NCBI GenBank assembly: GCA_002269645.1
Contig: NIVC01000808.1
Coordinates: forward strand, 186,001 to 250,000
DNA from: Macrostomum lignano
Taxonomy: Eukaryota
Direction: 5' to 3'
Length of the DNA: 64,000 nt
Part shown: positions 12,396 through 63,930 of the stretch, in pieces
How the letters are laid out: the number at the start of each line of letters is the position of its first letter
How positions within the stretch are numbered: the stretch's first letter is position 1
Program-made: the position numbers and the translations under genes
The notes under the pieces: model-generated
What the model was told of the DNA's origin: nothing
The model's database searches: none
The model's input: only the letters and a program-made list of their open reading frames with translations

Positions 12396-13282
12396 CCACC
12401 CAAACTCACGTGACCAAAAGATCCTATCAGTTCCCTCGTGGCCATAAAAATACGCCAGGTGCAGTCATAAATCATTCAAAATCGTTACATTATGATTTAT
12501 GACCTTTCGCGTAGGAATTACAAAAATTAATGAAAAAATATGCGTTAGAAAGTGAAGATGGTGAAGAGAAATGGATAATCGCTAATCCCAAAGTCACTTT
12601 TAGGGGTAAAACGCATAGCTGTCAAAGCTGTCACACGCTTGAATGAACACGAACAATAGGCCCTGACCTCATAAATCTTGATGGCCTGTCAAAAATGATG
12701 AGAAAAAAGCTACCGCCCGCATCTTCTCAGACCATCTGGCGCCAGCCTCAACACTGAGTGAGGCGCAGGTGGCTGTCAGACCAGCTCACAAGCAATGATT
12801 TATGACCCCAAAAGTAGCGAACCGCGCCTATGTTATTACTCTTGGAAGTGACTGTTAATACAGTAGAGCAGCTGTAGGAATTAAAATTGATGCGGGGAAA
12901 GAGTTGCAAAGCACACGCCCCTGCGTGCAGGGATGGCTCTGCAGCTATGGTTCACTTAATGCAACAGCACTTTAAGTTTCTCTGAATTGAACTGAAAGGC
13001 TAAATGAGTGCTAGACGCTATTTCGCTTCCCAAGAAAAGCGTAAAATCTAAATCTAAATCTAAAGAGCGTAAAATCTAAATAACGAGAATACTTTAATAA
13101 GTTTTCAACAAGGATTTTGACTTTTTTCTCGATCGAATCTCGATTTAAAAAAGTGCCGAGAATCCGAGATATAAAATAAAGTTAAATAAAGAGCCCTAGG
13201 TTGAATACCAATCTTCTTAATATAGCCTAGACATCAAAATAAACACATTGAATTCAAAATAAATCAAATTAGCGCAAAAAAA

Positions 13283-15900: not shown

Positions 15901-15932
15901 CTAGGTAAAAGGTACTGGCATTATCGAGGCGG

Positions 15933-16322
15933 TGCATCCGGGACGAGACGGAGCAGTGAGATCGGCAACAGTTCGAGTCGCGCAAAGGCCAGGCCGCGGA
16001 CCCAGGAGATGCTTGATTCGCCGGCCGGTTGAGAACCTGATTTTGCTAGAAGCCGTGACTGAATGAACCGTTATTGACTTTTCTAAAGCTGACAGTGACT
16101 ATTGACATCTGACTTCTCAGTCTTTATCTCTCCTTAGTTTCAATCTTCAGTTCTTATCCTATTGTGCTCGTGCTCTGTGAGTAAATTTTTCAACGCGACC
16201 TTTGGTTTTCTCTTTACAGTACGCTGGTAACGCTGCTTACATTTTAGGGGTTAGTTGTGCGCCTGCCTAGCACCCTCTGGTTTGTGTGTGCGCTTGGCGC
16301 CCCCCCCCCTCCTCTGTGCGCA
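15933..16322 (+). mobile_element. Candidate 3' LTR of the BEL/Pao element
   Basis: TGCA...GCGCA termini after a purine-rich GAGGCGG; internal GTGAGT...TTTACAG. No second copy available to confirm. Confidence 0.4.
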
Positions 16323-17086
16323 TGGTGGGGTGGTTGTTGCGAGAGACTGAGCTAAATATATGATTAGGTATTGCAGGCCTCTCAGTGAGCTCTTAATTGT
16401 TGATTTTTTTCTTGTTAGCTAAACTGACGGCCCTCTGACTTGTTCAATTTCTACAACATTTGTGTTTTACATATACGAGTATAAAAGGTTATACAAACAG
16501 AACTGCTATTTTTAGTTTATAGCTTTGTCATATTTAAATTAAATATCTCGAAGTCTTGATCAAATCTCGTATTGTATCGTCAAAAAATATGGGATCTCGA
16601 AAATCTCGAAAATTCAATATTGACTCTCAATCAATCAAAAGTTTTAAGTTTCGTGCTAAGTTTTTATTTTTTGGTCGTTTCTCAGTTGCAAAATTATTAC
16701 AAAAAATTGCAATAGTTGTTTCAAAAACATCACATTTGTCTTGGGGATTAAAAGTCACATTGTGCAATAATAAATAATTTATTAGATTAAATTAGATTTT
16801 GAGTTAACTCTCATACAAATACTCGTAATAAAATTCTTTTTGATGCTCGTGAGAGTCCGTGGGCGACTCAAGGTTTTTAAAACAACGCGACAACCCGAAA
16901 TTCAACGCAGATAAACTATTTAATGATGCAATAAAATAAAAGAGTCAACTGATGTAAAATAATTCATAAATTTAACTTAATTTAACTTGAATTTTACTGA
17001 CAGAAAAACAAACTTTTGTCCCGGGATTCGGAACGTTAAATCCCTTGATCACCAATCCTAGGATTGCTATTCCTAGTTTAATTCAA

Positions 17087-17728
17087 TCAATTCAAAAGTG
17101 GAACTGATATCCTTATTTTGGATGCCACAAAGTTGACTAATTTAGAAAGAATTGAAAAAATATTGTCACCGCTGTTCCGCCTCGCTTCCTCCAACAATTT
17201 TTGGATGTCGTTTTCGAGTTTTACCATCGCCCTGTGAGCCTCTTCATTCGACTGTCGCAAGTTTTTCACCTTTTCTCTGAGAGTTGCTACATCACTACGC
17301 AGCTGCGAATGGTCCACTTCCTTCCACTGTCGCAAGTTATTCACCTTTTCTCTGAGAGTTGCTACATCACTACGCAGCTGCGAATGGTCCACTTCCTTCG
17401 ACTGTCGCAAGTTATTCACCTTTTCTCTGAGAGTTGCTACATCACTACGCAGCTGCGAATGGTCCACTTCCTTCGACTGTCGCAAGTTATTCACTTTTTC
17501 TCTGAGAGTTGCTAAATCACTACGCAGCTGGTCCACTTCCTTCGACTGTCGCAAGTTATTCACCTCTTGTCTGAGAGTTGCTAAATCACTACGCAGCTGG
17601 TCCACTTCATTTGACTGTCGCAAGTTTTCCACCTCTTGTCTGAGAGTTGCTACATCACTACGCAGCTGCGAATAGTCCATAGCAACTATTCCCACTATGC
17701 CGCATAGTATGAAACCCAGATACTGCAT
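17087..17728 (-). CDS. Intronless secreted coiled-coil repeat protein, 213 aa, six 23-25 aa units
   Basis: Hydrophobic N-terminus, heptad repeats, RR site and amphipathic tail; paralog at 22461-22736. Confidence 0.8.
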   Translation of the reverse strand: MQYLGFILCGIVGIVAMDYSQLRSDVATLRQEVENLRQSNEVDQLRSDLATLRQEVNNLRQSKEVDQLRSDLATLREKVNNLRQSKEVDHSQLRSDVATLREKVNNLRQSKEVDHSQLRSDVATLREKVNNLRQWKEVDHSQLRSDVATLREKVKNLRQSNEEAHRAMVKLENDIQKLLEEARRNSGDNIFSILSKLVNFVASKIRISVPLLN

Positions 17729-34510: not shown

Positions 34511-44560
<10,050 letters not shown>

Positions 44561-45379: not shown

Positions 45380-46035
45380 TAGACTAGCATCAATAGGTCA
45401 AGGGTGCAACTTAGACTAGCATCAATAGGTCAAGGTCAAGCTTAGGCTAGCATCAATAGGTCAAGGGTCAATCTTAGACTAGCATCAACAGGTCAAGGGT
45501 CAATCTTAGACTAGCAGCAACATCAATAGGTCAAGGGTCAATCTTAGACTAGCATCAACAGGTCAAGGGTCAATCTTAGACTAGCATCAATAGGTCAAGG
45601 GTCAATCTTAGACTAGCATCAATAGGTCAAGGGTCAAGCTTAGACTAGCATCAAGATCAACAGGTCAAGGGTCAATCTTAGACTAGCATCAATAGGTCAA
45701 GGGTCAATCTTAGACTAGCATCAACATCAATAGGTCAAGGGTCAATCTTAGACTAGCATCAATAGGTCAAGGATCAAGCTTAGACTAGCATCAATAGGTC
45801 AAGGGTGCAACTAAGACTAGCATCAATAGGTCAAAGATGCAGCTTAGACTAGTATCAATATGTCAAAGGTGCAACTAAGACTAGTATCAATAGGTCAAAG
45901 ATGCAGCTTAGACTAGTATCAATAGGTCAAAGGTGCAACTAAGACTAGTATCAATAGGTCAAAGATGCAGCTTAGACTAGTATCAATAGGTCAAAGGTGC
46001 AACTAAGACTAGTATCAATAGGTCAAGGGTCTAGC
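45380..46035 (+). repeat. 32-nt minisatellite TTAGACTAGCATCAATAGGTCAAGGGTCAATC
   Basis: Direct read; unit variants change along the array. Confidence 0.93.
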
Positions 46036-46613
46036 TTAGGCTTAGACTTAATAAGTTTAGACTATCCACTCCTGCCTATATTATAATTTATTAAAAAACA
46101 TTTATTAGATTTACATTAATCAAAAGTTCAAACTCTTGGCTATAAGCATACTTCAACTGATTGTATTTTTATGTAACTTATGCCAGAGACCAATTAAATG
46201 CTTAATTAGATTAATATAAAAATGTTTTTTAAAATTATTTAAAATAATTTTAGGGCTTATATAAAATCAATTTGATTTTTATATATTTTTAAAGAATTAG
46301 AAGAATACAATGCTAAAATCTTTTTAAAAAGTATATAACAATAACAAGTTCATAATAAAATTATAATGGGTCACCCCATAGAGGGATAAAAGGGTAATTA
46401 TCCTTTAAGGGCTAGGATAGTTACCTGGGTACAATCAGCCCTTTCTGCTTCTAGCCTATATTTGCAGGGGCCCTCTTGATTCTTTTACAAAATTGATAAT
46501 TGTATAACTCATTTTGAATGCATGCCAAATCTAGGAAAACACATTTGTTATAATACACATATTTTTCATAATATTTTATGTGAACTAATTTTTGATTAAA
46601 CTAGCAGTAAATG

Positions 46614-47435
46614 TAGTGTTGGGCAAGTTACTCAAAAAAAGTAACTTGCGTTACTGTAAGTTAAGTTACCAATTTTTAAAAAGTAACTTACATTAGCCTA
46701 GTAACTTTAGACAAAAACCTTGTAACTTTTAAGTTACTGTCTGTTACTCACTTCCGTTACCCATGTTATTAACAAAATTTTCTGCTTTTTTCACATTGTT
46801 GTTATCAAAATTTGCCATTGGGCATTGGGATTAACCAATTAACAGACAGAGACAGGAATTGGCGACACAATGTGAGGCAAGTAGAAGGACCAATGGGCAA
46901 TGACAATCAATAATTAAAATTATAAATGATAAAATAAACAAATATCAATAATTCAATAGAGTAAAATAAATAGAACTGTATAAAATGGTCTAGTGTACTG
47001 CAGTGCCAGTGGAGGGACTTGTGGAGGCTACAGATGAATTTCTGTCTTTGGTTGTTTGTTTGAATCAAACTTGAAAATTTTTAGTAATGAAAATGAAAGG
47101 CGAAAATATTTTACCAAAATTAACAAAGTAAGACATATTTCAAGTATTTCTTCATTAATTAAGCGCAATACCATATGATACTATTCACTTAATTTTGAAT
47201 TTAGGAATGAAAAATGCAAAAACATATGACAACTGGAGTACTAGCTAAGCATTTCAGTTTTAAATTTAAATATTGCAATTGTTGCAAAGTAACTATAATG
47301 GACTTCCGAAATTTGAGTAACTTACCGTTATTCCATTACTAAAATAAAAAAGTAACTTGCGTAAAGAACGCTTTACAAAAAAGTAACTTGCGTTACCATT
47401 TGCAAGTTACTCGGTAACGGAAGTGCCCAACACTG
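46614..47435. mobile_element. hAT-type MITE, 822 bp
   Basis: TIR (T/C)AGTGTTGGGCA, exact 8-bp TSD AGTAAATG (46606-46613 and 47436-47443), subterminal AAGTAACTT repeats. Confidence 0.9.
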
Positions 47436-48469
47436 AGTAAATGTTAGTATAAATAGAAGCATTTTTGGCGGAGGAGAGACCAACCTCGCACATTGCAGTT
47501 CCTTAAGAAAGAAAGCTAGTATCAAATAATAAGAGTTCCAAGTAAATATTATTGAAGATTGTTTTCTGAGTTATTTATTTGCAGAAGTGAAGTGGTAGAG
47601 AATACATACAGTAAAATTGATGAAAATTTGCATCAATTTTGAGTGATTGTGCCACAACTTTTTCCTATCTTGGCAGTGCATTTTCTCTCTAGTGGGGGAT
47701 GGGGGCATTCTAAGTGGCTACGTATATACACTTGGACCCTTGCTATCTGGCAGACAATGAAATTCAATGCATAAACTTGCGAGCCTCTCACTGTAGCAGA
47801 CACTAAATGTACACTAAAAAATCAATGCTTTAAACTGGGAAATTTCAAACAAAAACTGCTACTTGAGTTTTGAACTTTGAGAGAAGAGACTTATATTGCT
47901 AGAAAGTTCTTTCAATGTTGATATAAGTTGTTTGCTTTAAGTATGAAAACTAAAAGCACAGCATTCAGAAAACAATTTCCATACTTTTAACTTTCTGCAA
48001 AGATTGTACTCATTTTTGCGAGACGCAATACATAAATTTGGGGGCTTCAACTTCTAACTGCCATTGTGTATTGGAGGGTTGATTTAGATTGCATAATCAT
48101 TTTGTTAACTTTAACTAAGACTGATACTGACTGACTGAAAAATCGATTTCACAATTAATTGGTTCAATTGGTTAATTTTTTTTATTATTGGCACCTTTCA
48201 AAGAGGCAGCACTATGCAGCTCTAACCCTAATCCTAACTAATGAATCCTTTTCTTTGCAGATATTTAAGCCAAACAATAATGGAATTCCAGTGATAGGAT
48301 TTCTTCCCCTTTCTTGTCTAACAGAAGAGTTGGCCTCATATTTTTATAAAAGTAGACCTAAATAAGACCTAGGCCTAATTAATATATAGCATAGGCCTTA
48401 ATGTTTTTTAATAATAAATTAAGACAAAATAAGCTAGGCCTAGCATAGCCTTGTATAGCTTATTATGGT

Positions 48470-48760
48470 GACATTGATTCTATTGTCATATAGGCTATTG
48501 ATTTTAGAGCTATATTGATCCTATTGTCATATAGGCTATTGATTTTAGAGCTGTATTAATTCTATTATCATATTGGCTATTGATTTTAGAGCTATATTGA
48601 TTCTATTATCATATTGGCTATTGATTTTAGAGCTATATTGATTCTATTGTCATATAGGCTATTGATTTTAGAGCTATATTGATTTTATTGTCATATTGGC
48701 TATTGATTTTAGAGCTATATTGATTCTATTGTCATATAGGCTATTGATTTTAGAGCTATA
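48470..48760 (+). repeat. 41-nt AT-rich minisatellite
   Basis: TATTGATTTTAGAGCTATATTGATTCTATTGTCATATAGGC, about 7 units. Confidence 0.92.
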
Positions 48761-50490
48761 AGGATATTTGTACATTGCCTTTTTATTTAATCTCATATCA
48801 TGCTTGTCTATACTTAGCATATATTACTTATATATGCATGCTACTTATCATTACAAATTGATATACATCATTGCTATATTACGAATACTAGTATATCCTA
48901 ATTGAGAAGGGGGTAGGCCTAATCTTTTTTTTACTTATTGAAAAATCTTAGTCTAGATCTGAGTCATTTTAAAAATATTGCAAGGTCCAAATCATGGACT
49001 TTTTATAACTGCCTCCCATAGGAACCTTTAGTAGTAAAGGCAATCATTCTATTATAATTAATATTAGCAAGCATTAACAAAAGTGATCAATAAATCTATA
49101 TTACTTGGCAATTTTAGACATTACAAATCAAGCATAAAAGAGAGAGATTTATTTTATACTATTGCCATTAGCAAAGTTATAAAAACTATATAATATAGGC
49201 CTTAGTAAGCCTAAGATTAATGTTCTTACAATGGCTTTTGAGTGATAGCAAACCCAAGCTTAAAATGAGCTAGTTAATTAGCATAATTCAAAGACAAAGA
49301 GAAACAATGTGGCATTTATTTGCTTGCCCATCATTTTTAGACCTATTAGAGCCACTAAGAAGAAAGCATAGACCCTATTCTCTATGCATTATATTATCAT
49401 TAATACCTTTTAAAGTTATATTGATTAGGCCCTAGGGCCTAGACAAAAAAGCTATTAAAAATTTTGACTAGGCCTATCTTATAGAATTGTTTGTTAAATT
49501 CACTATACATATTTTTTTAGCTATTGATATGAAAATTTCCAAAAATGAGTGTTTTTTAGACATATTGTTGCACTAGGCCCTAAAATATTTTTAGATCATA
49601 GTAGGCCTATTCTTATAAGTTATAGGGCCTACCATGCTATCACATATTACTATGTTTATTTGATAGATTTTTAGCACTCTATGAAGCTCATGGTGTCTAT
49701 TACAAAACAGGAAGCACTTAAATCATTATGGCCATAACATAGATTTTTCCAAACAAAATTAAGTACCTAGGCGCACTTGTACTAACATAGTTGTAAACAT
49801 TCTCTTTGAAACAGCAACTAGGCTATTGTAATTGTATAAGTAAACAATTTTGGGCCTAAAAAGTCACTTGGCAATACAAATTATCATGTCTCAAAAAAGA
49901 CCATAAAAATGAAGTATATGGTAGCCAAAAAATAAAAAACTTCAAAAACAAAAAAACTTATGCCAAACTAGTATAGGACATAAATTGAGTCCGAAAGTTT
50001 GTTTCCATACATGTTTACTTGAAAAAAATACTTGTACCAGTTGAAATACAAAAAAAATTTTTGTCAAATTTGTCCAAGTTATGTTGAATGAGCCACTAGG
50101 CCTATTATTTGCATTAAAATTTTCTGCATTAGCAAATAAAGTACATTAGATTTTCTACACCATGTTATAGAAGGAGCTAAAATTTAAATTTAAATTCTAA
50201 ACTATACTAGTAGATTATGTAAATGTAATATGTAGATGGCCTAGTATCTACAAAAAGGGCTAATGTCAGTAATGAGTCTAATAGCCTAATAGGTCCAAGC
50301 CTAACAATTTGAATATATAAAATAATATAAAAAAGAAAAGAAAGAAATACATATATAGGACTATCCTATCTAACTAGGCCTAACTATATTATTTAATATA
50401 GTATAATAGGGCCTAGTCATATGGAAACAATTTTGAGCGGATTTTTTTACTTTTGCTCAAATCAAGCTTCAAATATACAAGAAACACATA

Positions 50491-50752
50491 GGGCCTTTTC
50501 ATATTGCTTGTTCTGGTTCCAGAACCAGAACCAATTTGTGAAGTATAACTTTTTGTCTCCATAACTAGAGGGAGATACGTACTATAAAGTTTTTATTATT
50601 GAATGACAATCACCAAGAAGAAAGTGAAAAATTGTGCTAAGTGAGGTTGTTAAGGCAGTCAAACATTCAACAGAATTAAATAGTTATACTGCTGTTTTTC
50701 TAGGAAGATCCGAACCGATTCTGATTCTGGAATTGGTAATATGAAAAGCTTC
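50491..50752. mobile_element. Candidate MITE
   Basis: Imperfect TIR CTTTTCATATT / AATATGAAAAG with TTCCAGAA(C/T)CAGAA subterminal similarity. Confidence 0.45.
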
Positions 50753-50771
50753 AACAAAGAGGGCCTATAAA

Positions 50772-50910
50772 GTGGGTTTCCGGAAATATTAATTCAGACA
50801 CGAAAACGGAAAAGAAGTCAGAATATAGTCAGTAAATCTTGAAAAATAAAATTCCAACTTTACAAGCGATTGGATTAAATGTATGCCCAAATATCTGTCT
50901 GGAAACCCAC
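50772..50910. mobile_element. Candidate short MITE
   Basis: GTGGGTTTCC / GGAAACCCAC inverted termini. Confidence 0.35.
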
Positions 50911-52449
50911 GCATTACTTACATAGTCCTATTAGTAAAAAAGTATATAAATGTTGTAAGTTTACTGACCAGCCGAGCCAAGCCAAGCGATTGTAGACAGG
51001 ATGACGACTGGTGCCCTGTTTTTTTTATATATTTTTACTATTATTCACTATAAATGCAAAAAACCGACTTAATTTCAAATAGCTACGTCTTTTATTGCAA
51101 CTTTTTTCTTAAAATTAAACTTGTTGTTTTATTCACTTCAATTTTTTAAAGATTTAACAATTGTATTTTTCTTGGAACTTGCTTTCATAAAAAATAGTAC
51201 GCAATATAGGCCCCTATAAAAATCAGGTTTCAGAGTCTGCAATTTTATTTAACGCAAAGTAAAGTAAGTATTCTATTGCCTTATAATTTTTAAGTGAGCA
51301 GGTATTCTAATGTAAAATATATTTTATATTTCTATTCGGCATTTTTACTATACTTTGATACCGAATATAGTTGTTAGGCCTACTTATGACTAGATGTCTT
51401 ATGTCAAGTGTTGTTACTTATTTTTTATTAACACAATTAAATATATACATGTTTGCTGAGTATAGAAATAGTCATTGTTTCTAGAAATTTCACCATATTG
51501 CATAAAAAAGATGCCCTTATAAAATGAGTTGGGCCCACCAAATTTGTCAACTGGTAGAAAATGTAAGCAATTGATGCCCCACTCCCAAATCTTACATGTA
51601 TGCCAGAAAATTCTGGTGAGTGGTGTGCAACAGACCTTAAAAATGGTTGGCATAAAGTATCCTTCTTCATAGTAGAATTCTAATAGAGTAGCTTGCTTAA
51701 TAAATAGGTATAAAATGAATGCCAGAACAAACATTAACTTGTTTTTATTTACTTTAATTTAATTGCCAATGCATTTCAACCCATGTAGGTCACCGCCAGG
51801 GCAGTAATGAGATTGAAAATTTTAATAAACAGTTGAATAAATATACCTGTAATAATTTAAATATACAATGACAATATCAATTAATATATATAGTTTTCAA
51901 TTCAAACAAGTTCTAACACATAGTGCAGTAGTGTATACTCTAAGCTTAAACACGCTGAGTTGGTGGTTGGCACCCCCCATAGCTAGCTGGTAGTTTGGGC
52001 TTAGGTTTTGATCTTTGATGTACATAGCCTCTAAGATGTTCAAAGTGTGCTCATGGCGGCAACAATCAATAATCTTAAATAAGATTATTCTTTAGAAGGA
52101 AAATTACATTAAAAAAGAGAAAAATGCCCATAGCCTATTAGTAGGCTAATAAGTTCAGAATCAATATTTTCTGACTTTGGAATTCATACTAGTAGCATTT
52201 TTGTAACTATATGATTTTGCCATACTTGTAGGCCTAGTAATAATAATATAGGCATGGTTTTTGCTATATTTAGGATCATAAATCATTGTTTATGAGCTTG
52301 TCTGAGCCATCTGCACAATTTAAATTAACATCTATATCCGCTTTTATAATTTAGGAAAATATTCCATATTCCATATTTTTGCAAACAAGCTGCTTTCACA
52401 TCTGCATCCACTTCCACATCTGTATCTGCTTCCAAATTTTAGTAGATGC

Positions 52450-52560
52450 CCAGAGCAAGCATATGGCGTAGGTATAGGCATACAAAAGACTAAAATGTTA
52501 TAATCCAAAAAGGGTCTTACATTATTGCAACACAATTTAATGGTATTAAAGGTCATTTTT
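52450..52560 (-). mobile_element. Possible CR1/L2 LINE RT remnant
   Basis: NVRPFLDYNILVF resembles the VRP.L[ED]Y motif. Confidence 0.3.
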
Positions 52561-54074
52561 CTGGCATACTATATAATAGATTTAAGAATGTAGAATTGAT
52601 AAAAGTCAAATTTATCAAGTAATAATAGTTCAAACAAGCTGAGCAAATTTGTCAACAATAAAATAGACTTAAAGTTGTTCCTGGCTTAGTTCAATAACAT
52701 ATCTTTTAATTTAATTAGTCAATTAAAAGTAAAATTAGGCGACGATGAAGTTTGTTTTATCTAATCTTTATCTTATGCTTTTCAAATATACTTTTTAAAA
52801 AATTTATCATTATTAAATATGCATGTTTATCTAATTTCTTTTGATTAAATATATATTTCTATCAAATATCATATGGGCTTTAGTATAAAATCACTAAATA
52901 GGTAAACTAATTGGTCATTTGGCCAAAGAGTGTTATGTTCATTGATTATGTGTGGCAAGAACTATTGAATTAAAAATGAGCTAAGATAGGCTTAGTAGGC
53001 ATTTGACTTGTCATTGTGTCATTTGCATAGTTCTTTACAATGGCTTTAAAAATAATTTAAAAATGCAAAGCAAAATTTTGGGAAAAATGAAACTTTTACA
53101 AGCATTTAGGAAAGCCTTGCATATAATTTGCTTTAATTCATCTATGTAAAAAGACTTTATACCAAATTTATCTAGATTGTTGCTAAATTTGCTTTTGTTG
53201 AATTTCTCTACATTATATTTTTGTTGCCAAATTTTTATCTCTGTTGTAAAAGTTGAATAAGGCTAAGGACCATTAATTAAATTAGTAAATAAGAAATAAG
53301 AATTAAAGTGTTCACTAGGACACCTGCTATATAAAGTATATATTTATTTGACTCAATGTCCCACACTCTACAATGCAATAACCACCCTACAATTCACACT
53401 GAGGGGGAATGCCAAGTATACACCTGATGCCTTACAAACCAGAAGGTATAAGTATATACAACTAACCATGGAAATTGCTAAAGTTGCTAAATAATGAAAG
53501 CAGAATAAAAAAAAGAATAGCTAAGACCCCAATTGTTGATTTAATTGATTGAATCTTTCATAGATATTGTCTTCTAGGTATATAAAACTAAAATCTTGGT
53601 ACTCTAACCCATTATTTGTAATATGATTATTCTTTACTTGTGTTTTGTTTCGTGTTCTATATAACAAACAACTTTGGTTAAGGCATTATATTAGAACAAG
53701 TTATTAGAGGAGAATTATTTAATTGATTTGTCTACAAAAAGATAATTCAAAGTTTAAATGCTAAACTAAACTGGTCATATATAAAAATGCAATGCATTTT
53801 TTTCACAATCTTCTCAACTAACTAGAAAAAAATCTATCCTTTGAACTTTTAAAAATATGTTTTTTATGTCCAACTAATTAACAATTGGTAGCCTACTATA
53901 CTTAAACTCAGCCTTTTGACATTAACAAACCATAAGGTGTAGTCAATTTATTGTCTAAAACATTATGAACAATAATAGTGGCATTATCTAAATTTTAATT
54001 CTTGTCTTTTATGCTCATGGATAATATTTGTGTCTGAAATGTTAATTAAAAGGTGGCCTTTCCTGATTTCAGTC

Positions 54075-57000
54075 ATGGATGATGTACCCTACCTAGTGGT
54101 AGGGACTGAAGTGAGTGCAAAGTACAGAGGTGCATTCTGTGAAGCCAAAGTGAAGCGAATTGATGAAAAGAAGGTGCAATGCAAGGTAAAACGCTTTTCT
54201 TTTGTAGCGTTTTCTCATTCTCATTCCGATTTTTAAACATTCTATGACATTTTTTCTTCACTTTTTCAACATGCTTACTAGTAGTAGCATAATTAATAAA
54301 ATCAAATTAATGATCCACCGCTCAGGTGTACATGAAGTCCACCCTGACCAGCGCTGTGGTTAGTCTAGACCAAATTGTTGCCGGTTCAGTTCGCGTCGGC
54401 GGCTCCGTCACCGTCCGGTTGAAAGAGTCCAACGAGCCGGCCAGCGCCGAGGTGCAGAAGGTGCTGGACCAGAGCACCTACACCGTAGTGTTTAACGACG
54501 GCGACCAGCGTACGCTCAAGCGAACCCAGCTGGTGCTGAAAGGCGCCAGGCACTTTCAAGAGGACGAATCATTGGACCGGCTGCCCCTCACTCATCCTGA
54601 GCACTTCGGCACTCCGGTTGGCGCCAAGTTGAGCGCTAAAAAGCGCCGACGCCGTGGTCGCCGCAACGACGACGATGGCGAGGAGGAGGAGGACGACGAC
54701 GACGATGATGATGACGAAGAAGATGACGACAACGACGGCGAGACCTCTTCGTCCGTCGACGCCGCCAAAAACGGTCAAGCTTCGCCGCCTAGGACGCGAA
54801 AATCCGCTGTCGGCTCCTTGTCAACGACGTCGTCGGCTGCGGCGGCGGCGGCGGTTGCTGCTGCGGCGGCAGCGGCGACTCCGACTAATCGAGTCGGCCG
54901 GCCGCCGAGCCTCATCGACAAGCTGATCGGCCGGGTGATGATCGCGCAGCAGGGCGAGCAGCGGCGCCCCTGCCCTGTGCTGGCCTGCCTGCCGTCTGCT
55001 AATCCTGATCTGCCGGCCGGCCGGAAGTCCCTGCTAGTGCGCAGCTTCCGGGATAATAAATTCAGTCTGGCCGTTAAGAAAGATTTGAAACCGTTCACTC
55101 GCGAGAGGGCGATTAAATCCGATGATAAGGCGTTAAAAGCCGCTTTTGAGAAGGCGCTGCAGTGGGTGAGTACTCTGTTCACTGTTGGGACTCTGGTTTC
55201 CGATCTTCTACTGCTTGCTTCGAACTAATCCCGAATCTTCAGATATTCCTCACTGATCCCAAATCCTCAGATTCATTCCTCACTGATCCCAAATCCTCAG
55301 ATTCATTCCTCACTGATCCCAAATCCTCAGATTCATTCCTCACTGATCCCAAATCCTCAGATTCATTCCTCACTGATCCCAAATCCTCAGATTCATTCCT
55401 CACTGATCCCAAATCCTCAGATTCATTCCTCACTTATCCCAAATCCTCAGATTCATTCCTCACTGATCCCAAATCCTCAGATTCATTCCTCACTGATCCC
55501 AAATCCTCAGATTCATTCCTCACTGATCCCAAATCCTCAGATTCATTCCTCACTTATCCCAAATCCTCAGATTCATTCCTCACTTATCCCAAATCCTCAG
55601 ATTCATTCCTCACTTATCCCAAATCCTCAGATTCATTCCTCACTTATCCCAAATCCTCAGATTCATTCCTCACTTATCCCAAATCCTCAGATTCATTCCT
55701 CACTGATCCCAAATCCTCAGATTCATTCCTCACTTATCCCAAATCCTCAGATTCATTCCTCACTTATCTCAAATGCGGCGTGTATTAGTATAGTTTTGTA
55801 ACAAACTCAAACTACGTTACTGTTAGTAGAAAAAGAGGAGTATTTTTGTCAAATTATAATATACAGTTGGAGACTCGCGAGCTGCCCTACAACTGGTCTC
55901 GCTCCGACCTGATTGGCGAAGAGTCCGACTCCTCTGGCGAAGAATCCGAAGCTAGCAGCGTTGACGATCCCATCGAGCAGGAGGCTCAAGACCACTGGAT
56001 TGCGCAACTGTACGGCTTTATGGACGATCGCAGCACGCCTATAGGCAAAACGCCGGCAGTTGGTAATAAAGATTTGAATCTGTTCCGGCTGTACCACCTG
56101 GTGAAGCGATTCGGCGGCTACAATCGGGTTACTAGCCAGCTGAAGTGGCGCATTGTGCACAGCAAGCTGGGTTTGCCAGCTACCAGTTCCACTACTAAGC
56201 TCAAATCCGCTTATCAACGCTACCTGCTACCGTTTGAGGAGTTCGACAAGAAGCTCGGCTCTTCGTTCACCACCGGCATTGGCGGCGGCCTGCGCGGTCG
56301 ATCGTCAATGTCGGCATCAGCGTCGGGCTCCGCGGCTGCATCCGCTGGCGCCTCTGCCGGTTCAGCGTCTGGCGCTGGCGCCGCCTCGTCCGGTATGGCG
56401 TCGCAGCACCTGGCTGGCGCGCCGGGCTCCTCCAGCGGCAGCAGCGGCCGCAACTTCTTGTCCGCCCGCGAGAAGCGCCAGTCCGGCCTGACTCCGGTGA
56501 AACGGCCGCGAGTTCAAGCCGCCGCTGCTAAGGCTAATAAGGAGGCCAAAGCTGCTAAGGAGGCTGGGAAAGACAAGGATGCCGCGTCGGTGTCTGCTGA
56601 ATCGAACTCTACCGTGGCTTCCTCGTCGACTGCCGCCGCTACCGCCACTGCCAATCCTGCAGCTGCCGACTGCGCGTCATCCACTTCAACAGCAACTGCC
56701 GCCGGCCTACTGGATGACCAAGCTCCGCCTAGTCTGTCCAGGTAGTGCTAGTAGCTTTTTAATACATTTCTGAACTATATGGTATCTGTTGCATTAGCGA
56801 CATCTTCGATATTTTAGAATATACCCCCAGTGAATATACTTGAAAATATCCGCCTCTAAACTACCGTCACATATTCAACAGAATAGGCCTTTACTTATCT
56901 TTAAAAAATCTCCGAGAATCGCCCTCAAAGTCCTGAGCATCGCCTTCAAATCAGAGAATCAGCCTCTTTAAATCTCAGAGCATCAGCCTCAAGATCTTCT

Positions 57001-60000
57001 TAGAGAATCGCCCTCAAATATTTTCAGAGAGTTGTCATCAAATCTCAGAGAACGCCCTCAAATCTCTTCAGAGAATTGCCCTCAGATCTCAGAGAATCGC
57101 CCTCAAATCTCAGAGCATCAGCCTCAAATCTCCTTAGAAAATCGCCCTCAAATATTTTCTGAGAATCGCCCTCAGATCTCCTCAGAGAATCGCCCTCAAA
57201 TCTCCTCAGAGAATCGCCCTCAGATCTCAGAGAATCGCCCTCAGATCACCTCAGAAAATCGCCCTCAAATCTCCTCAGATAATCGCCCTCAGATCTCAGA
57301 GAATCGCCCTCAGATCTCCTCAGCGAATCGCCATCAAATCTCCTCAGAGTATCGCCCTCAAATATTTTCAGAGAATCGCTCTCAAATATTTTCCGAGAAT
57401 CGCTCTCAAATCTCGGAGAATCGCCCTCAAATATCCTCAGAGAAACGCATTCATGGCTAAAATTTATCCTGAATAACCAACCCCCCAGGTCCAGCAGCGT
57501 GTTCGAACGTGTCGAAGCGCCATCAAACGCCTCGGATGTCGCCGCCGCTGCCAACGCAGCCAACAAACTTGCCGATGCTGTTGAAAGTAAGGACAACGAC
57601 GATGAAGGCAACTCGTCGGCTGGCAGCGGCGCAGGCGACGCCTACCAAGTAGACGACAAGGTGCGGGTCCGCTACGGCGAGCCCGGCCGCTACAAAGTCT
57701 ACGACGGTAGAATTGTAAAGAGATCCTGGCGCGCCAATCGGGTCAGCTATCACGTGCACTATTTCGGCTGGAATCAACGCTACGACGAGATTGTGACGCC
57801 CGATCGGATTCTCGGTCGCTGCCACCGCGGCCACGCTGTTGGCAGGCTCAACCACGGCCAGCCGCTGTCTTCGCTGCCGCCGCCGCCACCGCCGCCGCCG
57901 CCGCTTGCCGCCTCGGCTTCGAAGGCGAAATCAACGTCGAAATCGCCAGCCAGACTGCGGTCGGAGAGCGAGTCGCTGAGCAGTCCCAGCCCTGTGCAGG
58001 CGGATGTGCAGAAGGCCAGGCGAAGAAAGGTTGGTTTTGCTAGATGTATTGTTTTACGAGCTAATTTACTCAATTATAAGACTAAAAAGTTGATGCTTTA
58101 AAAAACGGTACAACCGTATCAGAAATTGGAACTTAGCTTTGGATTTCAGACATTTGAGTGTGTGAGAAAATGTGACAAGAAACCTTTTTTTTAGACCCTA
58201 AAACTACAATCTAGTGCCCCCCCTTCGGGGCGCCGAATAAGCAAGGGACGAAAATTATTAATGTGAATCCTTTAAAATGAAAGCACAATGCTCACAATGG
58301 CTATAAAGTAAATTTTCTGCTTGGCTTTAGCAAAAAGCGTATTTCTGCATTTGCTTTGCCAACAAGATTTTTCATTAGTTTCAATCTTACTACTTGTTGG
58401 CTTGCTTTACTCTGCATAGCTGGTCGGAGGCATTCACGGAGCATGTAAATTTTATGCATTATTACTAATGAGCATGTAGAAACAGTTATAACCCTCCTCC
58501 TTTTGCAACCGGGCTTGGGCCCGGCTTTGGCGGAGTACAAGAGACTGACTATCTGGGGTTTGCAAAGGCTGCTTCAAACCCCCCTCTGGCAGCATTTTTG
58601 AAATTGATAACAACAACAACAACAAAATAGGCAGCCCTGCATTCAAGGTCACAGGCTAGGCGGGTCAGATGGCGCGCCGCAGAGCTTGAGAGCGCACAAA
58701 GTCCGCCCCGTTGGCAGTGTCGGGCGCTCCAGCGTTGAATCGAAGGCAGTCCATGCATCGACGGGTTGCCTGAACGGGCCCTGCAAGGTCAGTAGCCCTC
58801 GGCACGGATCACGTGGCCCGCCAGTTGAAGTCGCAGCCGGCGCAGGATGATGGACGGGCGCTGCAGCTGGAAAGTAAAGCAGATTACTGTAGCCGCCTTC
58901 ACTGTTTGACCGCGATAGAACATTTGCACCATCACAAAAAAAGAATATCTATGTCCCTCAGCTACTGAACTTAAACTTTCAGCGACTGTGATCGGCCTAA
59001 ATGATTTCTATCTAAACTTGGACACGCCAGTTTGCCCCTATAGCCAAATAAAGCTTCAATCTTGACATGTGATCGCTGAAGTTGATGTCCCGGATGAAAT
59101 TGACCGCGCATTCTATAAACGTAAACCACCGCTTGGGTTGGACAGAATCGTCGTTTTCATCATCAGAGTCGAATTAAGCACAGTAAAGCTTGAGCAAAAG
59201 AAGACGACTCTTTAACAACTTGTCAACCACTACGAGTGTGTGTTAATTATTACTACTAGTAGGCTAACATGTACTCGTAGCTACTTAATCGAACGTTCCT
59301 CTATCGGTCTTCCAAATTGACTTTCCCAACGCCAAGCAGGTGTCGCACTCCTACGTTCAACAGCACGGCCCGAATTCGTCGCCGACAAGCTGCTCCTCGG
59401 CCGACGGTCGGGCATCGGCGGCGGCAGCGGCCGCGGCGGACACAACAGCGGCTCAGACAGCCGCCCCCGACTCTGCCGCCGTCAATCTTGACATTTTATC
59501 TTCGCCGGCGCGCCAGACGTCCAACGCTGGCGACGCCGACGACGACTGGCAGAGCGGTAAAACATCGGCCGCCGTGATGGATGAAGAAGATGACGTTGAA
59601 GACGACGACGATGAACGATGCGGAGCCGCCTCCGAGACAGCCTCGGCGACAGTTGCCTCCGCTGCTGCCGCTCGTGCCGACGCCGCGGAAAGCAGCGACG
59701 GCGGCAAAAGCTCCCTAGCCGTCAGCAGCGTCGGCGGGCGTCGTCACCGTAACGATTCCGGCTCCCGCATCGACGAAGCCGATGACGACGGCGACGTTGA
59801 GGATGAAGTTGAAGAGGAGGACGACGACGACGGCAAGTCCCGGGCAAATGGCGCCAGCGCCGCCGCTGCCGCCGGCCCCGCCAATCGTCGGAGGCCTGGT
59901 CGACGCGGACGCGCAAAAAATCAACATCAGCAGCAGCAGCGTCCGTCGTCGGCGGTGCCGCCTTCGCCGACGCCGTCGTCAGTTGCTGGCGTCGGGCAGC

Positions 60001-60488
60001 AGCAGCAGCCGGACGACGATGAGGAAGCTGACGACGACGGCGAAGACGAGGCAGCTTCGGTCACCACCGCTGCTACTGCACAGTCAACTGTGGCCTCCAC
60101 CCCGACGCCCGGCTCAGCCGGTGGTCGCCCGGCTCCGGGGTCCAAGCGACGCGCTCGTCGCAGCGTCGGCTCCTCCTTGTCGAACTCAACCGTCGCCGCA
60201 TCGGCCGGACAAACGCCCGGTCGCCGTCAGCCGGACAGGCCGAAGTATGTCCGGCCAGCCGATCAGCCGTTTGTGAGCAAATACGGCAGCTTCATGCCGC
60301 CAGACTTGGACGCTCACGATCACGCCACTCGTGTCCGGATGCTGTCCGAAGCGATCGCTCGGGTGCGCGAAGCCTGGCGCTCGGAGAAGCAGGCGCTATC
60401 GGAGCTGGACAAGCGCTACAGGCTGCAGAGGAAGCGGGCCAGGCTCGAGTCCGAGCGAGCGGCGGGTGCCGGCGGTCAGGCCAATTAG
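54075..60488 (+). CDS. ARID4: ARID4 (RBBP1-like) chromatin protein; exons 54075-54185, 54326-55165, 55867-56741, 57489-58029, 59340-60488, 1171 aa
   Basis: [21 protein letters not shown] Tudor, ARID ([15 protein letters not shown]), chromobarrel ([12 protein letters not shown]) and a C-terminal coiled coil. Junction phases are consistent (3516 nt). Confidence 0.93.
55247..55772 (+). repeat. 30-nt minisatellite TCCTCACTGATCCCAAATCCTCAGATTCAT in ARID4 intron 2
   Basis: About 17 units with CTGAT/CTTAT variants. Confidence 0.95.
56910..57445 (+). repeat. 21/24-nt minisatellite CAGAGAATCGCCCTCAAATCTCCT in ARID4 intron 3
   Basis: Direct read. Confidence 0.92.
58606..58765 (-). repeat. Second copy of the (TTG)n-tailed dispersed repeat, in ARID4 intron 4
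   Basis: Homologous to 17893-18070. Confidence 0.8.
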
Positions 60489-61914
60489 CGGTAGCAGGAA
60501 TTGGCCGGGGCATTTTCAATTTCTCGTTATCAGCATGGCAACACAGGGGTAGTTTCGGTCAACTATCACATTTGCGCCAATAGTCTGTCTGATTTGGTTA
60601 TAGTGTCTGTTTTAAGTAGTAGCTTCATTGACCGAACTGACTCCGTCTGGAGACTGCATTATAACAAACTAGTGTGCTCATTTATTGTTGCCTTTTCTAT
60701 GAAATGAAAGACGTCTCTTTATATGGCAATTAAAAAAGGCAAGTTTTCGACCGAATAATAATAAATGAACGATTCACTTAGTTTTCTACTTTCAACTCAG
60801 TAGTAAGCGACAATGTGTAAGCTATTTTATGAAAAGAATGACCAAAGTTGGAGTGACTGGTAGACAGGGCATTGTGAACGACTCACTAGTGACTCTAGCA
60901 ACGGTTCAAGCGACTCTAATACGACGAAGAGGCGACTGTTGAGTCACGAGCGCGTCGCGTGAGCTGCAGAATCAAAGCAAAAAAATTATTTCTTTCCAAT
61001 TTTACCTGTGCTACCTGCAAGGAATCTGGAATAAATCTGACGCGACGCAAAAGTGATTCTGGGACGCCGTAATGTACATTAGTCTGCGCCAAAAAAAGAA
61101 TGTACATTGCGTGAGGTATTATTTGTTTATCTGTTGCATTGCTCATATCGGTGCATACTGTGGCTAGCGATGAGCATGCATCAGCGATGTCCCCTGCTGA
61201 TTACTTCTGTCTGGCGCTATTTATGCGTTCGCTACTTGTCAAGCTCTGCTTTTCCACTGCCTGTAGATAATTATAATCACCGTACTTATTAACTTTGCTT
61301 TTCTCATGCGCGCTCTCCACTAAATTGAAAGTTTTCCGTTATTGCTTATTAATTATTAATAAATTGATTGAATTCTATATTGTGCCTGCTAGCCGTACTA
61401 GTGCAGTATTCTCTCCGCTCTCTCAGTTTCGCATCTCCAGCTGCCCCCCCCCCTGGCACGTCGGATGAACTTCCATTCAGTTTAGTCAGTTTTTATACGA
61501 AATAACAGTTGGTCTACTCCTCTATTGGCCCTCATTAATTGTATATAAGTTCATATATGGAAGCCACTTCTGGTTTGTTTCGTTTGCATTCTCCGTGTGT
61601 GTTTTTTTTTACTTTTTAATTTATTAACTGAATTATAATATAAAAGGTGGCTTAACTAAAAGCTAATTGACAAGCTTCAAATTACTGATAAAATTTTAAC
61701 TGAATGTTTATTTATTTAATTATTTATAATATTAGTAGGAAGATTGTACTTTTCTTTTTTGTTCAATTATCAGTAAGAAAACACGATTAATGATTTAGTT
61801 GGATAGCAAACAAATTACAATGACCTCATTATCCCACCTTATGACCTCACAATTCCATTCTATGATCATTTTGTTTCATTGTATGATTCTTCTATCCTTT
61901 GTCTTCACAGCTCC

Positions 61915-62360
61915 ATCGTATGACCTTACAGCTCTATCATATGATCCCACAGCTTTTCCTTATGACCCCACAGCTCCTTATAAACCCACAGCCTTTTGAC
62001 CCCACAGCTCTGCCTTATGACACCACACCTCCTTTTTATGACCCTACATTTCCTTTTTATGACCCCACAGCTCTACCTTATGACCCCACAGCTCTACCTT
62101 ATGACCCCACAGCTCTACCTTATGACCCCACAGCTCTACCTTATGACCCCACAGCTCTACCTTATGACCCCACAGCTCTACCTTATGACCCCACAGCTCT
62201 ACCTTATGACCCCACAGCTCTACCTTATGACCCCACAGCTCTACCTTATGACCCCACAGCTCTACCTTATGACCCCACAGCTCTACGTGATGACCCCACA
62301 GCTCCACCTTATGACCCCACACCTCCTTATGACCCCACAGCTCCACTTTATGACCTTACA
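61915..62360 (+). repeat. 21-nt minisatellite TTATGACCCCACAGCTCTACC upstream of the Rab9 exon
   Basis: Direct read. Confidence 0.93.
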
Positions 62361-62466
62361 CGTCTATTCTATGATTGCATAGTTTCCATTACCCCATAGT
62401 TTGATTTAGTGTACACATAGCCAAAACACGCTCTGACCATTTAGACTGAATTCCCCATTGCCGCAG

Positions 62467-63129
62467 CCGCGCTCCCAGCTACTCAAAGTGATCCTACTCG
62501 GAGACGGCGGCGTTGGCAAGTCGTCGTTAATGACTCGCTACGTGCAGCAGCGCTTCGATCCGCACCAGCATCACACCATCGGGGTGGAATTCCTAGTTAA
62601 AGAGGTCAGCCTGTCTGACGGGTCCCGGTACACCCTGCAGATCTGGGACACCGCCGGCCAGGAGAGATTCCGATCGCTGCGCACCCCGTTCTACCGCGGC
62701 GCCGACGCGTGCATGCTGGTGTACAGCCTGGAGGATTCGAAATCGTTTGCTAATTTAAACATCTGGCGTCAGGAGTTCTTTCATTATTCCGGCGTGGAAT
62801 CAGGCGAATTTCCATTTCTTCTAGTTGGCAATAAGAGCGACTCGGAGCGGGCCGCGGTGCCAGCTGATCAGGCCGAGGCCTGGGCTACAGAGCTGGATAT
62901 GCCGCACTTATTAACCTCGGCTAAGAGTGCTCACAATGTTGACCAAGCGTTTGAGCAGTTGACTAGTCTATGGGCTAAGCGTCAACTGATTGGCTTAGCG
63001 CGCGGCGGATCCGCGGATCAGGATAATGATAATGAGGTTCGCGATGTGGGCACCGTGCGAATTAGGCGAGGCGGCGGCGAAAGTGCCGCTGGCAGTGTTG
63101 GCGGCTACCGTCGTCGGTGCTGTAATTGA
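62467..63129 (+). CDS. RAB9: Rab9 GTPase, single coding exon lacking its own initiator ATG
   Basis: KVILLGDGGVGKSSLM, HTIGVEFL, WDTAGQERFRSLRTPFYRG, GNKSD, TSAK and C-terminal CCN; acceptor GCCGCAG at 62466. Confidence 0.93.
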   Translation, partial: PRSQLLKVILLGDGGVGKSSLMTRYVQQRFDPHQHHTIGVEFLVKEVSLSDGSRYTLQIWDTAGQERFRSLRTPFYRGADACMLVYSLEDSKSFANLNIWRQEFFHYSGVESGEFPFLLVGNKSDSERAAVPADQAEAWATELDMPHLLTSAKSAHNVDQAFEQLTSLWAKRQLIGLARGGSADQDNDNEVRDVGTVRIRRGGGESAAGSVGGYRRRCCN

Positions 63130-63178: not shown

Positions 63179-63930
63179 AATATAGCTATTTGCAGCCCAG
63201 TTGGGCTTAAGCGCATTGAATTGAATCCAAGATAGGTTTGCCAAAGTACTGGAGCTTTCGTCTATGGTAGCAGGGCTGGCACGGCGGCATTTAATTTGGT
63301 CCAACAAGCATCAATTTGGTCCGTAACTTCATTTGCAACTGCTGTGGTGGAGCAAGATCAGCCCCAGTATTGTGGGCCATATGCTAGGCTGCCGAACGAA
63401 TGTCAATTGGCTTGTGATCGAAGCGCTCAACAGAGATGAACACCCAAAGGACATTGCAAGGTTGCTGAATGTAAAAAAATAATGGTTTACAGCATCCATC
63501 AGCGCGTTGAAACCACTGCCGGCAGAAATAGCCTGCAAATGGGTGGCAATCGCCAAGGCAAGTTGCTCAAGAACGTCAAGTCCAACTGCTACTCAATGCA
63601 GTTGAGACGAACCCTTTGTTTTTCGGTGCAGAAAATGCAGCAGAAGTTGAAGGCACAGTTTCAGTTGGTTATCAGATTTTGACTATCAGCAGACCTCTGG
63701 AAAAGCGACTGAAAATTTTTGGTAGAGACGCTGACATTCCAGCGGTACGCAACAACCCACAGGTTGTGAGAAGGCAAGGAGTTTGCCTGATGGCTCACGA
63801 GCGTTTGGACCAAATTGAATGCCGCTGTGCCAGCCTTGCTGCCATAGACAGGAGCTCCAGTACATTGGCAAACCTATCTTAGAGTAAATTCAATACGCGT
63901 AGGCCCAAATGGGCTGCAAAAAGCTATATT
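63179..63930. repeat. Inverted repeat, 126-bp arms (63179-63304 and 63805-63930)
   Basis: Arms align without gaps at roughly 85% identity by manual count. Confidence 0.9.

What the first reader, a model, noticed from the sequence alone, without database searches (positions are those of the whole stretch)
62440..62540. Rab9 lacks an initiator codon; a spliced-leader AUG would supply it exactly
Seen: the acceptor at 62466 is followed in phase 0 by CCG CGC TCC CAG CTA CTC AAA GTG, and the first in-frame ATG comes after the P-loop. No convincing upstream ATG exon was found. Established: flatworm spliced leaders end in AUG, which can serve as the initiator Met. Inference: trans-splicing yields MPRSQLLKVILLGDGGVGKS, close in length to the canonical Rab9 N-terminus, making this gene dependent on the SL for translation.
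Basis: partly seen in the sequence, partly recalled or inferred. Interest (0 to 1): 0.7.

Follow-up and report, generated by a model that had tools for sequence, protein, structure and literature searches.

The report
Rab9 gene started by spliced leader
A Rab9 GTPase gene of the flatworm Macrostomum lignano has no start codon of its own and most likely gets it from the AUG at the end of the trans-spliced leader RNA, a mechanism known in flatworms since 2006, so this is one ordinary new example.

Summary
The window is Macrostomum lignano (assembly Mlig_3_7, contig NIVC01000808.1). A splice acceptor ends at 62466. An intronless 220-codon Rab9 reading frame begins at 62467 (CCG), with an in-frame stop at 62434-62436. 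The first in-frame ATG (62530) lies after the P-loop.

The M. lignano spliced leader (SL) is published and ends in ATG. Joining it gives MPRSQLLKVILLGDGGVGKS, a normal Rab9 N-terminal length.

The strongest support is comparative. An old paralogue (dS about 1.9, dN/dS 0.12) begins at exactly the same codon behind an unrelated acceptor and also lacks an ATG. GenBank models of both genes are 5'-partial and start at the acceptor. That annotation cut transcripts at peaks of SL-read mapping.

I could reach no RNA reads, so trans-splicing at this site is inferred, not shown.

One complication: on the sister contig, a GenBank model splices an exon of the upstream ARID4-like gene in frame onto the same acceptor. 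That model skips an exon which I show to be coding, so it is probably a read-through by-product.

Use of the SL AUG as initiator is established in flatworms (Cheng et al. 2006), so interest is low.

The parts
62434..62436 (+). In-frame TGA that closes the Rab9 frame upstream of the acceptor
   Evidence: the translation reads ...NTL*PFRLNSPLPQ|PRSQLL.
62445..62466 (+). 3' splice acceptor region (actgaattccccattgccgcAG). It is the inferred SL trans-splice site. It is also the acceptor used by the cis-spliced fusion model on the sister contig.
   Evidence: One search gives the sequence. One search shows that homology to the paralogue starts exactly after the AG. Searches show the P0121 junction ...ARRRK|PRSQLL.
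62467..63129 (+). Single coding exon of the Rab9-like GTPase: 220 codons plus TGA, with no ATG of its own before the P-loop. GenBank model P0001 is partial and starts at 62470.
   Evidence: It is 100% identical to the sister copy over 663 nt. dN/dS against the paralogue is 0.116.
62500..62523 (+). P-loop (G1) GDGGVGKS
62530..62532 (+). First in-frame genomic ATG (residue 22). Starting here would delete the P-loop.
61906..62355 (+). 21-bp tandem repeat, 22 copies (CACAGCTCTACCTTATGACCC), in the presumed outron. Each unit carries an ATG and a CAG.
54067..58029 (+). Upstream same-strand ARID4-like gene (RBB1NT, ARID and chromo-like domains). Its acceptor tttcAG ends at 54072 and its own ATG is at 54075. 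The last exon shown here ends ...AGG CGA AGA AAG|GT, a phase-0 donor at 58029/58030.
59340..60488 (+). Terminal coding exon of the ARID4-like gene: 382 codons, stop TAG at 60486-60488. Fusion model P0121 skips it. AATAAA lies at 60760-60765.
   Evidence: Comparing the window with L001 gives 7 substitutions, 6 of them at codon position 3, plus one 30-nt in-frame indel.

Best explanation
This is a functional Rab9-family GTPase gene of Macrostomum lignano. Its single coding exon begins at codon 2, directly behind a 3' splice acceptor (AG at 62465-62466).

Inferred mechanism: the pre-mRNA is trans-spliced at this acceptor to the 35-nt spliced leader. The pre-mRNA comes either from the gene's own promoter or from read-through of the upstream ARID4-like gene. 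The leader's last three bases, AUG, fall in phase 0 with CCG CGC..., so the mature mRNA reads ...UUGC AUG CCG CGC UCC CAG. It would be translated from the leader's AUG into MPRSQLLKVILLGDGGVGKS... (221 aa).

The outron, with its many ATG-bearing repeats, would be discarded. The in-frame join of the upstream gene's exon to the same acceptor is most likely a minor by-product of read-through transcription.

What is shown: the gene anatomy, the organism, the SL sequence (from the literature), the conservation of the arrangement, and purifying selection. What is inferred: that SL trans-splicing occurs at this site and that translation starts at the SL AUG.
For: 1. Organism and leader. The window is M. 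lignano Mlig_3_7, contig NIVC01000808.1. The SL ends in ATG and is followed by a GTAAG donor in the SL RNA gene. About 30% of genes are trans-spliced (PMC8629364).

2. Anatomy. The acceptor is in phase 0, an upstream in-frame stop is present, and no ATG precedes the P-loop.

3. N-terminal length. With the SL Met, the P-loop offset is 12 residues. Among 118 Rab9 homologues, 13 have offset 12 and 35 have offset 13.

4. Paralogue. Three contig copies (L002-L004) begin at the same CCGCGCTCCCAGCT, right after a TTACAG acceptor. Their upstream sequence and their upstream neighbour (Tim17) are unrelated. dS is 1.89 and dN/dS is 0.116. The ATG-less, acceptor-at-codon-2 layout has therefore been kept in two genes under purifying selection since an old duplication.

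5. Annotation. The GenBank models of all these copies are 'partial' and start 0-3 nt from the acceptor. Five partial models in the fetched loci all start 0-5 nt after an AG. The annotation pipeline (TBONE) cut transcripts at peaks of trimmed SL reads (PMC5730564).

6. Selection between copies. The Rab9 CDS is 100% identical between the two sister contigs, while the flanks are 97-98.4% identical.

7. Precedent. SL AUG use as initiator is established in flatworms (Cheng et al. 2006, cited in PMC12582326, PMC9851317 and PMC3510090). It is noted as the likely start codon in Macrostomum (PMC10468722).
Against: I could reach no RNA-seq read, cDNA or peptide for this gene. No transcript-derived protein beginning MPRSQ... 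exists in the protein collection. No gene-level list of trans-spliced genes was found in the literature held.

The acceptor CCGCAG only partly fits the enriched trans-splice motif [T/C]TNCAG.

The window model starts at 62470, not 62467, so its 5' end is 1-3 nt off the exon boundary.

On the sister contig, a GenBank model (P0121) uses the same acceptor for an in-frame cis-splice from the ARID4-like gene. The acceptor is therefore not exclusively a trans-splice site.

Sequence alone leaves hypothetical phase-0 ATG mini-exons upstream: 2 with a GT[AG]AG donor and 26 with GT[AG].
Confidence: 0.8

Rival explanations
1. Rab9 is made mainly as the C-terminal part of a cis-spliced ARID4-like-Rab9 fusion. 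The donor after ...VQKARRRK (58029) joins the acceptor at 62466 in frame, and the ARID4-like ATG at 54075 starts translation.
For: GenBank model PAA89222.1 (P0121, 1009 aa) on sister contig NIVC01000158.1 has exactly this junction. The same donor and acceptor exist in the window, both in phase 0.
Against: The model skips a 382-codon exon (59340-60488) that is in phase with the same donor. That exon evolves as coding sequence: 6 of 7 substitutions are at codon position 3, and its one indel is 30 nt and in frame. It has its own stop and an AATAAA signal.

The paralogue keeps the same acceptor position behind a different upstream gene, Tim17. The window contig's own model is a stand-alone Rab9. 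An in-frame join has a 1 in 3 chance of arising. In parasitic flatworms, acceptors are widely shared between cis- and trans-splicing (PMC12582326).
Confidence: 0.07
2. A small, unannotated cis-spliced 5' exon lies in the 1.7 kb between the ARID4-like poly(A) signal and 62466, and it supplies an in-frame ATG.
For: Sequence alone allows it. Two ATG...|GT[AG]AG phase-0 candidates exist (61072-61110 and 61704-61772), plus 26 with weaker donors. One is ATGACCCCACAGCTCTAC|GTGATG at 62269-62286, inside the tandem repeat.
Against: None of the four annotated stand-alone copies includes such an exon. The repeat-borne donor variant is absent from the sister contig. The upstream regions of the two paralogues are unrelated. 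The extensions would add 6-23 residues that resemble no Rab9 N-terminus.
Confidence: 0.08
3. The copy is an untranslated retro-pseudogene, or it is translated from a near-cognate codon (CTG 62446 or TTG 62458) on an unspliced transcript.
For: The window copy has no intron, whereas the paralogue has an 881-nt phase-2 intron in codon 76. Near-cognate codons lie in frame between the stop and 62467.
Against: All G motifs and the C-terminal CC motif are intact. dN/dS is 0.116. The CDS is identical in the two sister contigs although the flanks differ. The codons upstream of 62467 are not shared with the paralogue. Similarity of the upstream 50 nt to the SL is at chance level (score 15, empirical p about 0.05).
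Confidence: 0.04

Closest known systems
Schistosoma mansoni and S. japonicum mRNAs that need the SL 3'-terminal AUG as initiator (Cheng, Cohen, Ndegwa and Davis, J Biol Chem 2006; known here only through citing papers)
   Same: The flatworm SL ends in AUG. The acceptor abuts codon 2 of a conserved ORF in phase 0. No other AUG would preserve the conserved N-terminus.
   Different: The species is a free-living macrostomorph and the gene is Rab9. Here there is no experimental proof of SL addition or of initiation at the SL AUG.
Echinococcus granulosus SL-bearing cDNAs in which the SL AUG is required (PMC3510090)
   Same: In that study the SL ATG was taken as the putative start codon and 143 of 187 SL-bearing clusters were predicted full length. 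Some need it to match orthologue N-termini. Use of the SL AUG is conserved between species, as it is here between paralogues.
   Different: Those cases rest on cDNA sequences that carry the SL. This one rests on genome anatomy plus annotation.
slORFs: ORFs created by start codons donated by spliced leaders (PMC9851317)
   Same: The start codon is supplied in trans by the leader.
   Different: slORFfinder cases are mostly novel or alternative ORFs in nematodes, Oikopleura and trypanosomes. Here the main conserved ORF depends on the leader.
Downstream genes of SL-resolved operons in M. lignano (PMC8629364) and C. elegans
   Same: A same-strand upstream gene, an acceptor at the 5' end, and an annotated read-through transcript that joins the two genes.
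   Different: The spacing is about 1.7-2.0 kb. Even after removing the 450-nt tandem repeat it exceeds the 1-kb criterion used for M. lignano operons. A separate promoter is not excluded.

Membership tests
Flatworm mRNAs that use the SL 3'-terminal AUG as initiator | The organism has an SL RNA whose leader ends in AUG, followed directly by the donor GU | tested here: met
   The organism is identified as M. lignano. The published SL is ...TTATTGCATG with a GTAAG donor (PMC8629364).
Flatworm mRNAs that use the SL 3'-terminal AUG as initiator | The SL is actually added at the acceptor in front of the ORF (SL-bearing reads or cDNA) | not testable with these tools
   No RNA data were reachable. Indirect support: 5'-partial GenBank models start 0-3 nt from the acceptor in an annotation that was cut at SL-read peaks.
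Flatworm mRNAs that use the SL 3'-terminal AUG as initiator | The SL AUG is in frame with the main ORF | tested here: met
   AG|CCG is in phase 0 and the frame is open to the stop at 63127-63129.
Flatworm mRNAs that use the SL 3'-terminal AUG as initiator | No genomic AUG could give the conserved N-terminus | tested here: met
   An in-frame stop lies at 62434-62436. The first ATG at 62530 comes after the P-loop. With the SL Met the N-terminal length matches 118 homologues.
Flatworm mRNAs that use the SL 3'-terminal AUG as initiator | Translation starts at the SL AUG (protein N-terminus) | not testable with these tools
   This needs N-terminal proteomics or a reporter assay.
Rab9 subfamily of small GTPases | A Ras-fold G domain with G1-G5 motifs, best similarity to Rab9A/B, and a C-terminal double-Cys prenylation motif | tested here: met
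   Pfam Ras 2.8e-51. The motifs GDGGVGKS, WDTAGQE, NKSD and SAK are present and the C-terminus is ...RRRCCN. The top 120 hits carry Rab-9A/B names at 47-70% identity.
SL-resolved operon (M. lignano criterion of PMC8629364) | Adjacent same-strand genes with a trans-spliced downstream gene and a repeat-adjusted intergenic distance under 1 kb | tested here: inconclusive
   The genes are on the same strand. The sister-contig model joins them. From stop 60488 to 62466 is 1978 nt. From AATAAA it is about 1700 nt. Removing the 450-nt tandem repeat leaves about 1.25-1.5 kb.
Processed retrogene carrying a relic spliced leader | An intronless copy with recognisable SL sequence directly upstream of the former trans-splice junction | tested here: not met
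   The copy is intronless. The best local alignment of the SL to the upstream 50 nt scores 15, which is the top 5% of 18,272 background windows, so not significant.

The most novel reading that the evidence does not exclude
The acceptor at 62466 might be a deliberately dual-use site. SL trans-splicing there would give a stand-alone Rab9 that starts at the leader's AUG. In-frame cis-splicing from the ARID4-like exon, skipping that gene's own terminal exon and poly(A) site, would give a translated Tudor/ARID/chromo-Rab9 chimera with a function or regulatory role of its own.
Probability: 0.08. Interest if true: 0.45.

Novelty: new member of a known kind. Interest (0 to 1): 0.2.

Why it matters
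It adds one clean, conserved example, in two old paralogues, of a housekeeping gene in a free-living model flatworm that appears unable to be translated correctly without the leader's AUG.

In practice it explains why GenBank and UniProt list the M. lignano Rab9 proteins as 'partial' or Met-less. Annotation pipelines for Macrostomum should add back the SL ATG.

It also matters for transgene design in M. lignano. A construct that copies this gene's 5' region will need either the acceptor or an added ATG.

It opens no new question, because the mechanism has been established since 2006.

Tried and rejected
1. SL relic or retrogene idea. The upstream agactgaatt...attgc looks like the SL's agactcaattt attgc, but the local alignment score of 15 has an empirical p of about 0.05 against 18,272 window segments. 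Rejected.

2. Special nucleotide constraint right after the junction. The first 4 codons are identical between the paralogues, but 46% of conserved-residue codons are identical overall, so p is about 0.047, and other runs of 4 occur. Rejected.

3. SL RNA gene in the window. There was no match to the last 16 nt of the SL with up to 3 mismatches and no Rfam hit.

4. Transcript-derived proteins starting MPRSQ... None exist in the protein collection. The 90% cluster holds only the two GenBank models.

5. Gene-level lists of trans-spliced genes. Nothing was found for Mlig008114, RAB9 or ARID4 in the full text or the held supplements. Wasik 2015 and Cheng 2006 are not held.

6. Annotation support for the ARID4-like terminal exon. 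A homology search found only two fragmentary M. lignano ARID proteins, neither covering it, and there was no Pfam hit. Its coding status was instead shown by the substitution pattern between sister contigs.

7. I did not scan the metagenome, prokaryote or viral collections for the SL-Rab9 junction. A negative result there would say nothing about a flatworm transcript.

Full report
**What is in the sequence**

At 62440-62540 the + strand reads ...tttagactgaattccccattgccgcAG|CCG CGC TCC CAG CTA CTC AAA GTG.... The AG is at 62465-62466. The frame that begins at 62467 is open for 220 codons to TGA at 63127-63129 and has no intron. It encodes PRSQLLKVILLGDGGVGKSSLMTRY...RRRCCN.

Upstream, the frame is closed by TGA at 62434-62436. 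No ATG lies between that stop and the P-loop (62500-62523). The first in-frame ATG is at 62530, residue 22, so starting there would remove the P-loop. Only near-cognate codons, CTG at 62446 and TTG at 62458, lie in between.

**What the gene is and where it comes from**

The product has a Ras-family G domain (Pfam Ras 2.8e-51, starting at residue 7). All G motifs are intact and the C-terminus carries a CC motif. All named best hits are Rab9A/B.

The exact protein is a GenBank entry of Macrostomum lignano assembly GCA_002269645.1 (Mlig_3_7), contig NIVC01000808.1. There it is annotated as a 5'-partial CDS starting at RSQ..., window position 62470. The organism is thus a free-living flatworm.

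**The spliced leader**

M. lignano has a single published 35-nt spliced leader (SL): CGGTCTCTTACTGCGAAGACTCAATTTATTGCATG. In the SL RNA gene it is followed by a GTAAG donor. About 30% of genes are trans-spliced, and the enriched acceptor motif is [T/C]TNCAG (PMC8629364).

The leader ends in ATG. Joined at 62466/62467 it gives ATG CCG CGC..., that is MPRSQLLKVILLGDGGVGKS. The P-loop then starts 12 residues from the Met. Among 118 Rab9 homologues, the commonest offsets are 13 (35 proteins) and 12 (13 proteins). The N-terminus would therefore be of canonical length.

**Comparative evidence**

M. lignano has a second Rab9 gene, present as three near-identical contig copies (P0122-P0124, loci L002-L004). 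It lies downstream of a Tim17 gene, not of the ARID4-like gene.

Its annotated, again 5'-partial, CDS begins at CCGCGCTCCCAGCT, the same codon, directly after ...aaattatatttacAG. Upstream of the AG the two genes share nothing.

The two genes differ by dS = 1.89 and dN = 0.22, so dN/dS = 0.116 over 169 codons. The duplication is therefore old and both copies are under purifying selection. The paralogue has an 881-nt phase-2 intron in codon 76 that the window copy lacks.

The window CDS is also 100% identical over 663 nt to the copy on sister contig NIVC01000158.1 (L001). The flanks are only 97-98.4% identical.

Two functional genes have kept an ATG-less first codon exactly at an acceptor for this long. 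That is what dependence on a trans-supplied AUG predicts.

**Annotation evidence**

The Mlig_3_7 annotation was made by trimming SL sequences from RNA-seq reads, mapping the reads, and cutting transcriptional units at the resulting peaks (TBONE). ORFs were then called with TransDecoder (PMC5730564).

I assume a 5'-partial TransDecoder ORF starts at the first complete codon of its transcript. On that assumption the transcript models start at 62468-62470 in the window copy, and within 0-2 nt of the exon boundary in the paralogue copies.

All five 5'-partial models in the fetched loci start 0-5 nt after an AG. This is indirect evidence that SL reads map here. I could not see the reads themselves.

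**The complication: an in-frame cis-spliced model**

Upstream on the same strand lies an ARID4-like gene with RBB1NT, ARID and chromo-like domains. Its acceptor tttcAG ends at 54072 and its own ATG is at 54075.

On the sister contig, GenBank model PAA89222.1 (P0121, 1009 aa) joins the exon ending ...VQKARRRK (window 58029|GT) in frame to PRSQLL... at this very acceptor.

I judge it a by-product for four reasons.
- The same donor is in phase with a 382-codon exon at 59340-60488, which ends in TAG and is followed by AATAAA at 60760-60765.
- Between the two sister contigs that exon shows 7 substitutions, 6 of them at codon position 3 (my own binomial estimate, not a tool result, gives p about 0.007). 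Its one indel is 30 nt and in frame. It is therefore real coding sequence, and the fusion model skips it.
- The paralogue has the same acceptor position behind a different upstream gene.
- The window contig's own model is a stand-alone Rab9.

The fusion model does show that the acceptor is used and that transcription can run from the ARID4-like gene into Rab9. In parasitic flatworms, sharing of acceptors between cis- and trans-splicing is reported to be extensive (PMC12582326).

The pair does not clearly meet the published operon criterion for M. lignano, which is under 1 kb after subtracting repeats. The distance is 1978 nt from the stop and about 1.25-1.5 kb after removing the 450-nt tandem repeat.

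**Other rivals**

Sequence alone permits hypothetical phase-0 ATG mini-exons in 60800-62466: 2 with GT[AG]AG donors and 26 with GT[AG]. None is annotated in any copy, and the one inside the tandem repeat is absent from the sister contig.

A retro-pseudogene reading is contradicted by the selection signatures. The apparent similarity of the upstream sequence to the SL is at chance level (p about 0.05).

**Comparison with what is known**

All reported flatworm SLs end in AUG. Cheng et al. (J Biol Chem 2006) showed that this AUG can serve as initiator. According to PMC9851317, that study found it in frame in 28% of trans-spliced S. mansoni transcripts and required by more than 40 cDNAs (see also PMC12582326).

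In E. granulosus, with the SL ATG taken as the putative start codon, 143 of 187 SL-bearing clusters were predicted full length. Use of the SL AUG is conserved among Neodermata (PMC3510090).

This Rab9 gene is thus a new, well-conserved member of a known class, not a new mechanism.

**Verdict**

It rests on anatomy, conservation and annotation, not on reads. Novelty: new member of a known kind. Interest: about 0.2.

Noticed in passing
L002 18062-18070 and L003 14188-14196, compared with L004 19102-19110 (M. lignano contigs NIVC01000751.1, NIVC01003828.1, NIVC01001267.1): An Acinus-like gene (RSB motif) has a 5'-partial model starting SSFCASEEDD..., with no Met for about 52 residues. In L004 it follows ...catttgcAG|TCT. 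In the other two copies the assembly reads ...cATTGCATG|TCT, which is the last 8 nt of the spliced leader, with no AG. Mlig_3_7 was polished with Pilon using RNA-seq reads (PMC5730564). This may therefore be SL sequence written into the assembly at a trans-splice site, or it may be a real variant. An 8-mer alone is not significant.
   Followed up: partly
window 54067-54100: The ARID4-like gene has tttcAG|TC ATG GAT GAT. If it is trans-spliced at 54072, the SL AUG is out of frame and opens a short ORF (ATG TCA TGG ATG ATG TAC CCT ACC TAG) that overlaps the gene's own ATG. This is the opposite situation to Rab9. The sister-contig model P0121 starts at D, just after this ATG.
   Followed up: partly
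window 54075-60488: The ARID4-like gene is intact in the window. No gene is called in the 10 kb upstream of Rab9 on this contig. Its 382-codon terminal exon (59340-60488) is absent from every protein the homology search returned. The gene therefore appears to be un-annotated or mis-annotated in public records.
   Followed up: partly
window 55224-55774, compared with L001 about 11150-17579: A 30-bp minisatellite (ACTGATCCCAAATCCTCAGATTCATTCCTC) in an intron of the ARID4-like gene has 18 copies in the window. On the sister contig it spans about 6.4 kb. A second 24-bp array lies at 56906-57448.
   Followed up: partly
window 61906-62355: A 21-bp tandem repeat of 22 copies lies just upstream of the Rab9 acceptor. 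Every unit carries an ATG and a CACAG, so an unspliced 5' region would be full of upstream AUGs and cryptic acceptors.
   Followed up: no
window 63179-63930: An element of about 750 bp is bounded by 126-nt inverted repeats that are 87% complementary. It starts 50 nt after the Rab9 stop codon and is also present on the sister contig. It looks like a non-autonomous DNA transposon in or next to the 3' UTR.
   Followed up: no
window 46001-54000: An 8-kb block has 28-31% G+C, between regions of 45-62% G+C. Its content was not examined.
   Followed up: no
window 2189-3304 (+) and 34514-35545 (-): Other genes are present in the window. One ORF has a dynactin subunit 5 domain (4e-46). Another, on the minus strand, is the KA1-domain end of a MARK/SIK-type kinase (9.8e-20). 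The latter matches the kinase called upstream on the sister contig.
   Followed up: no
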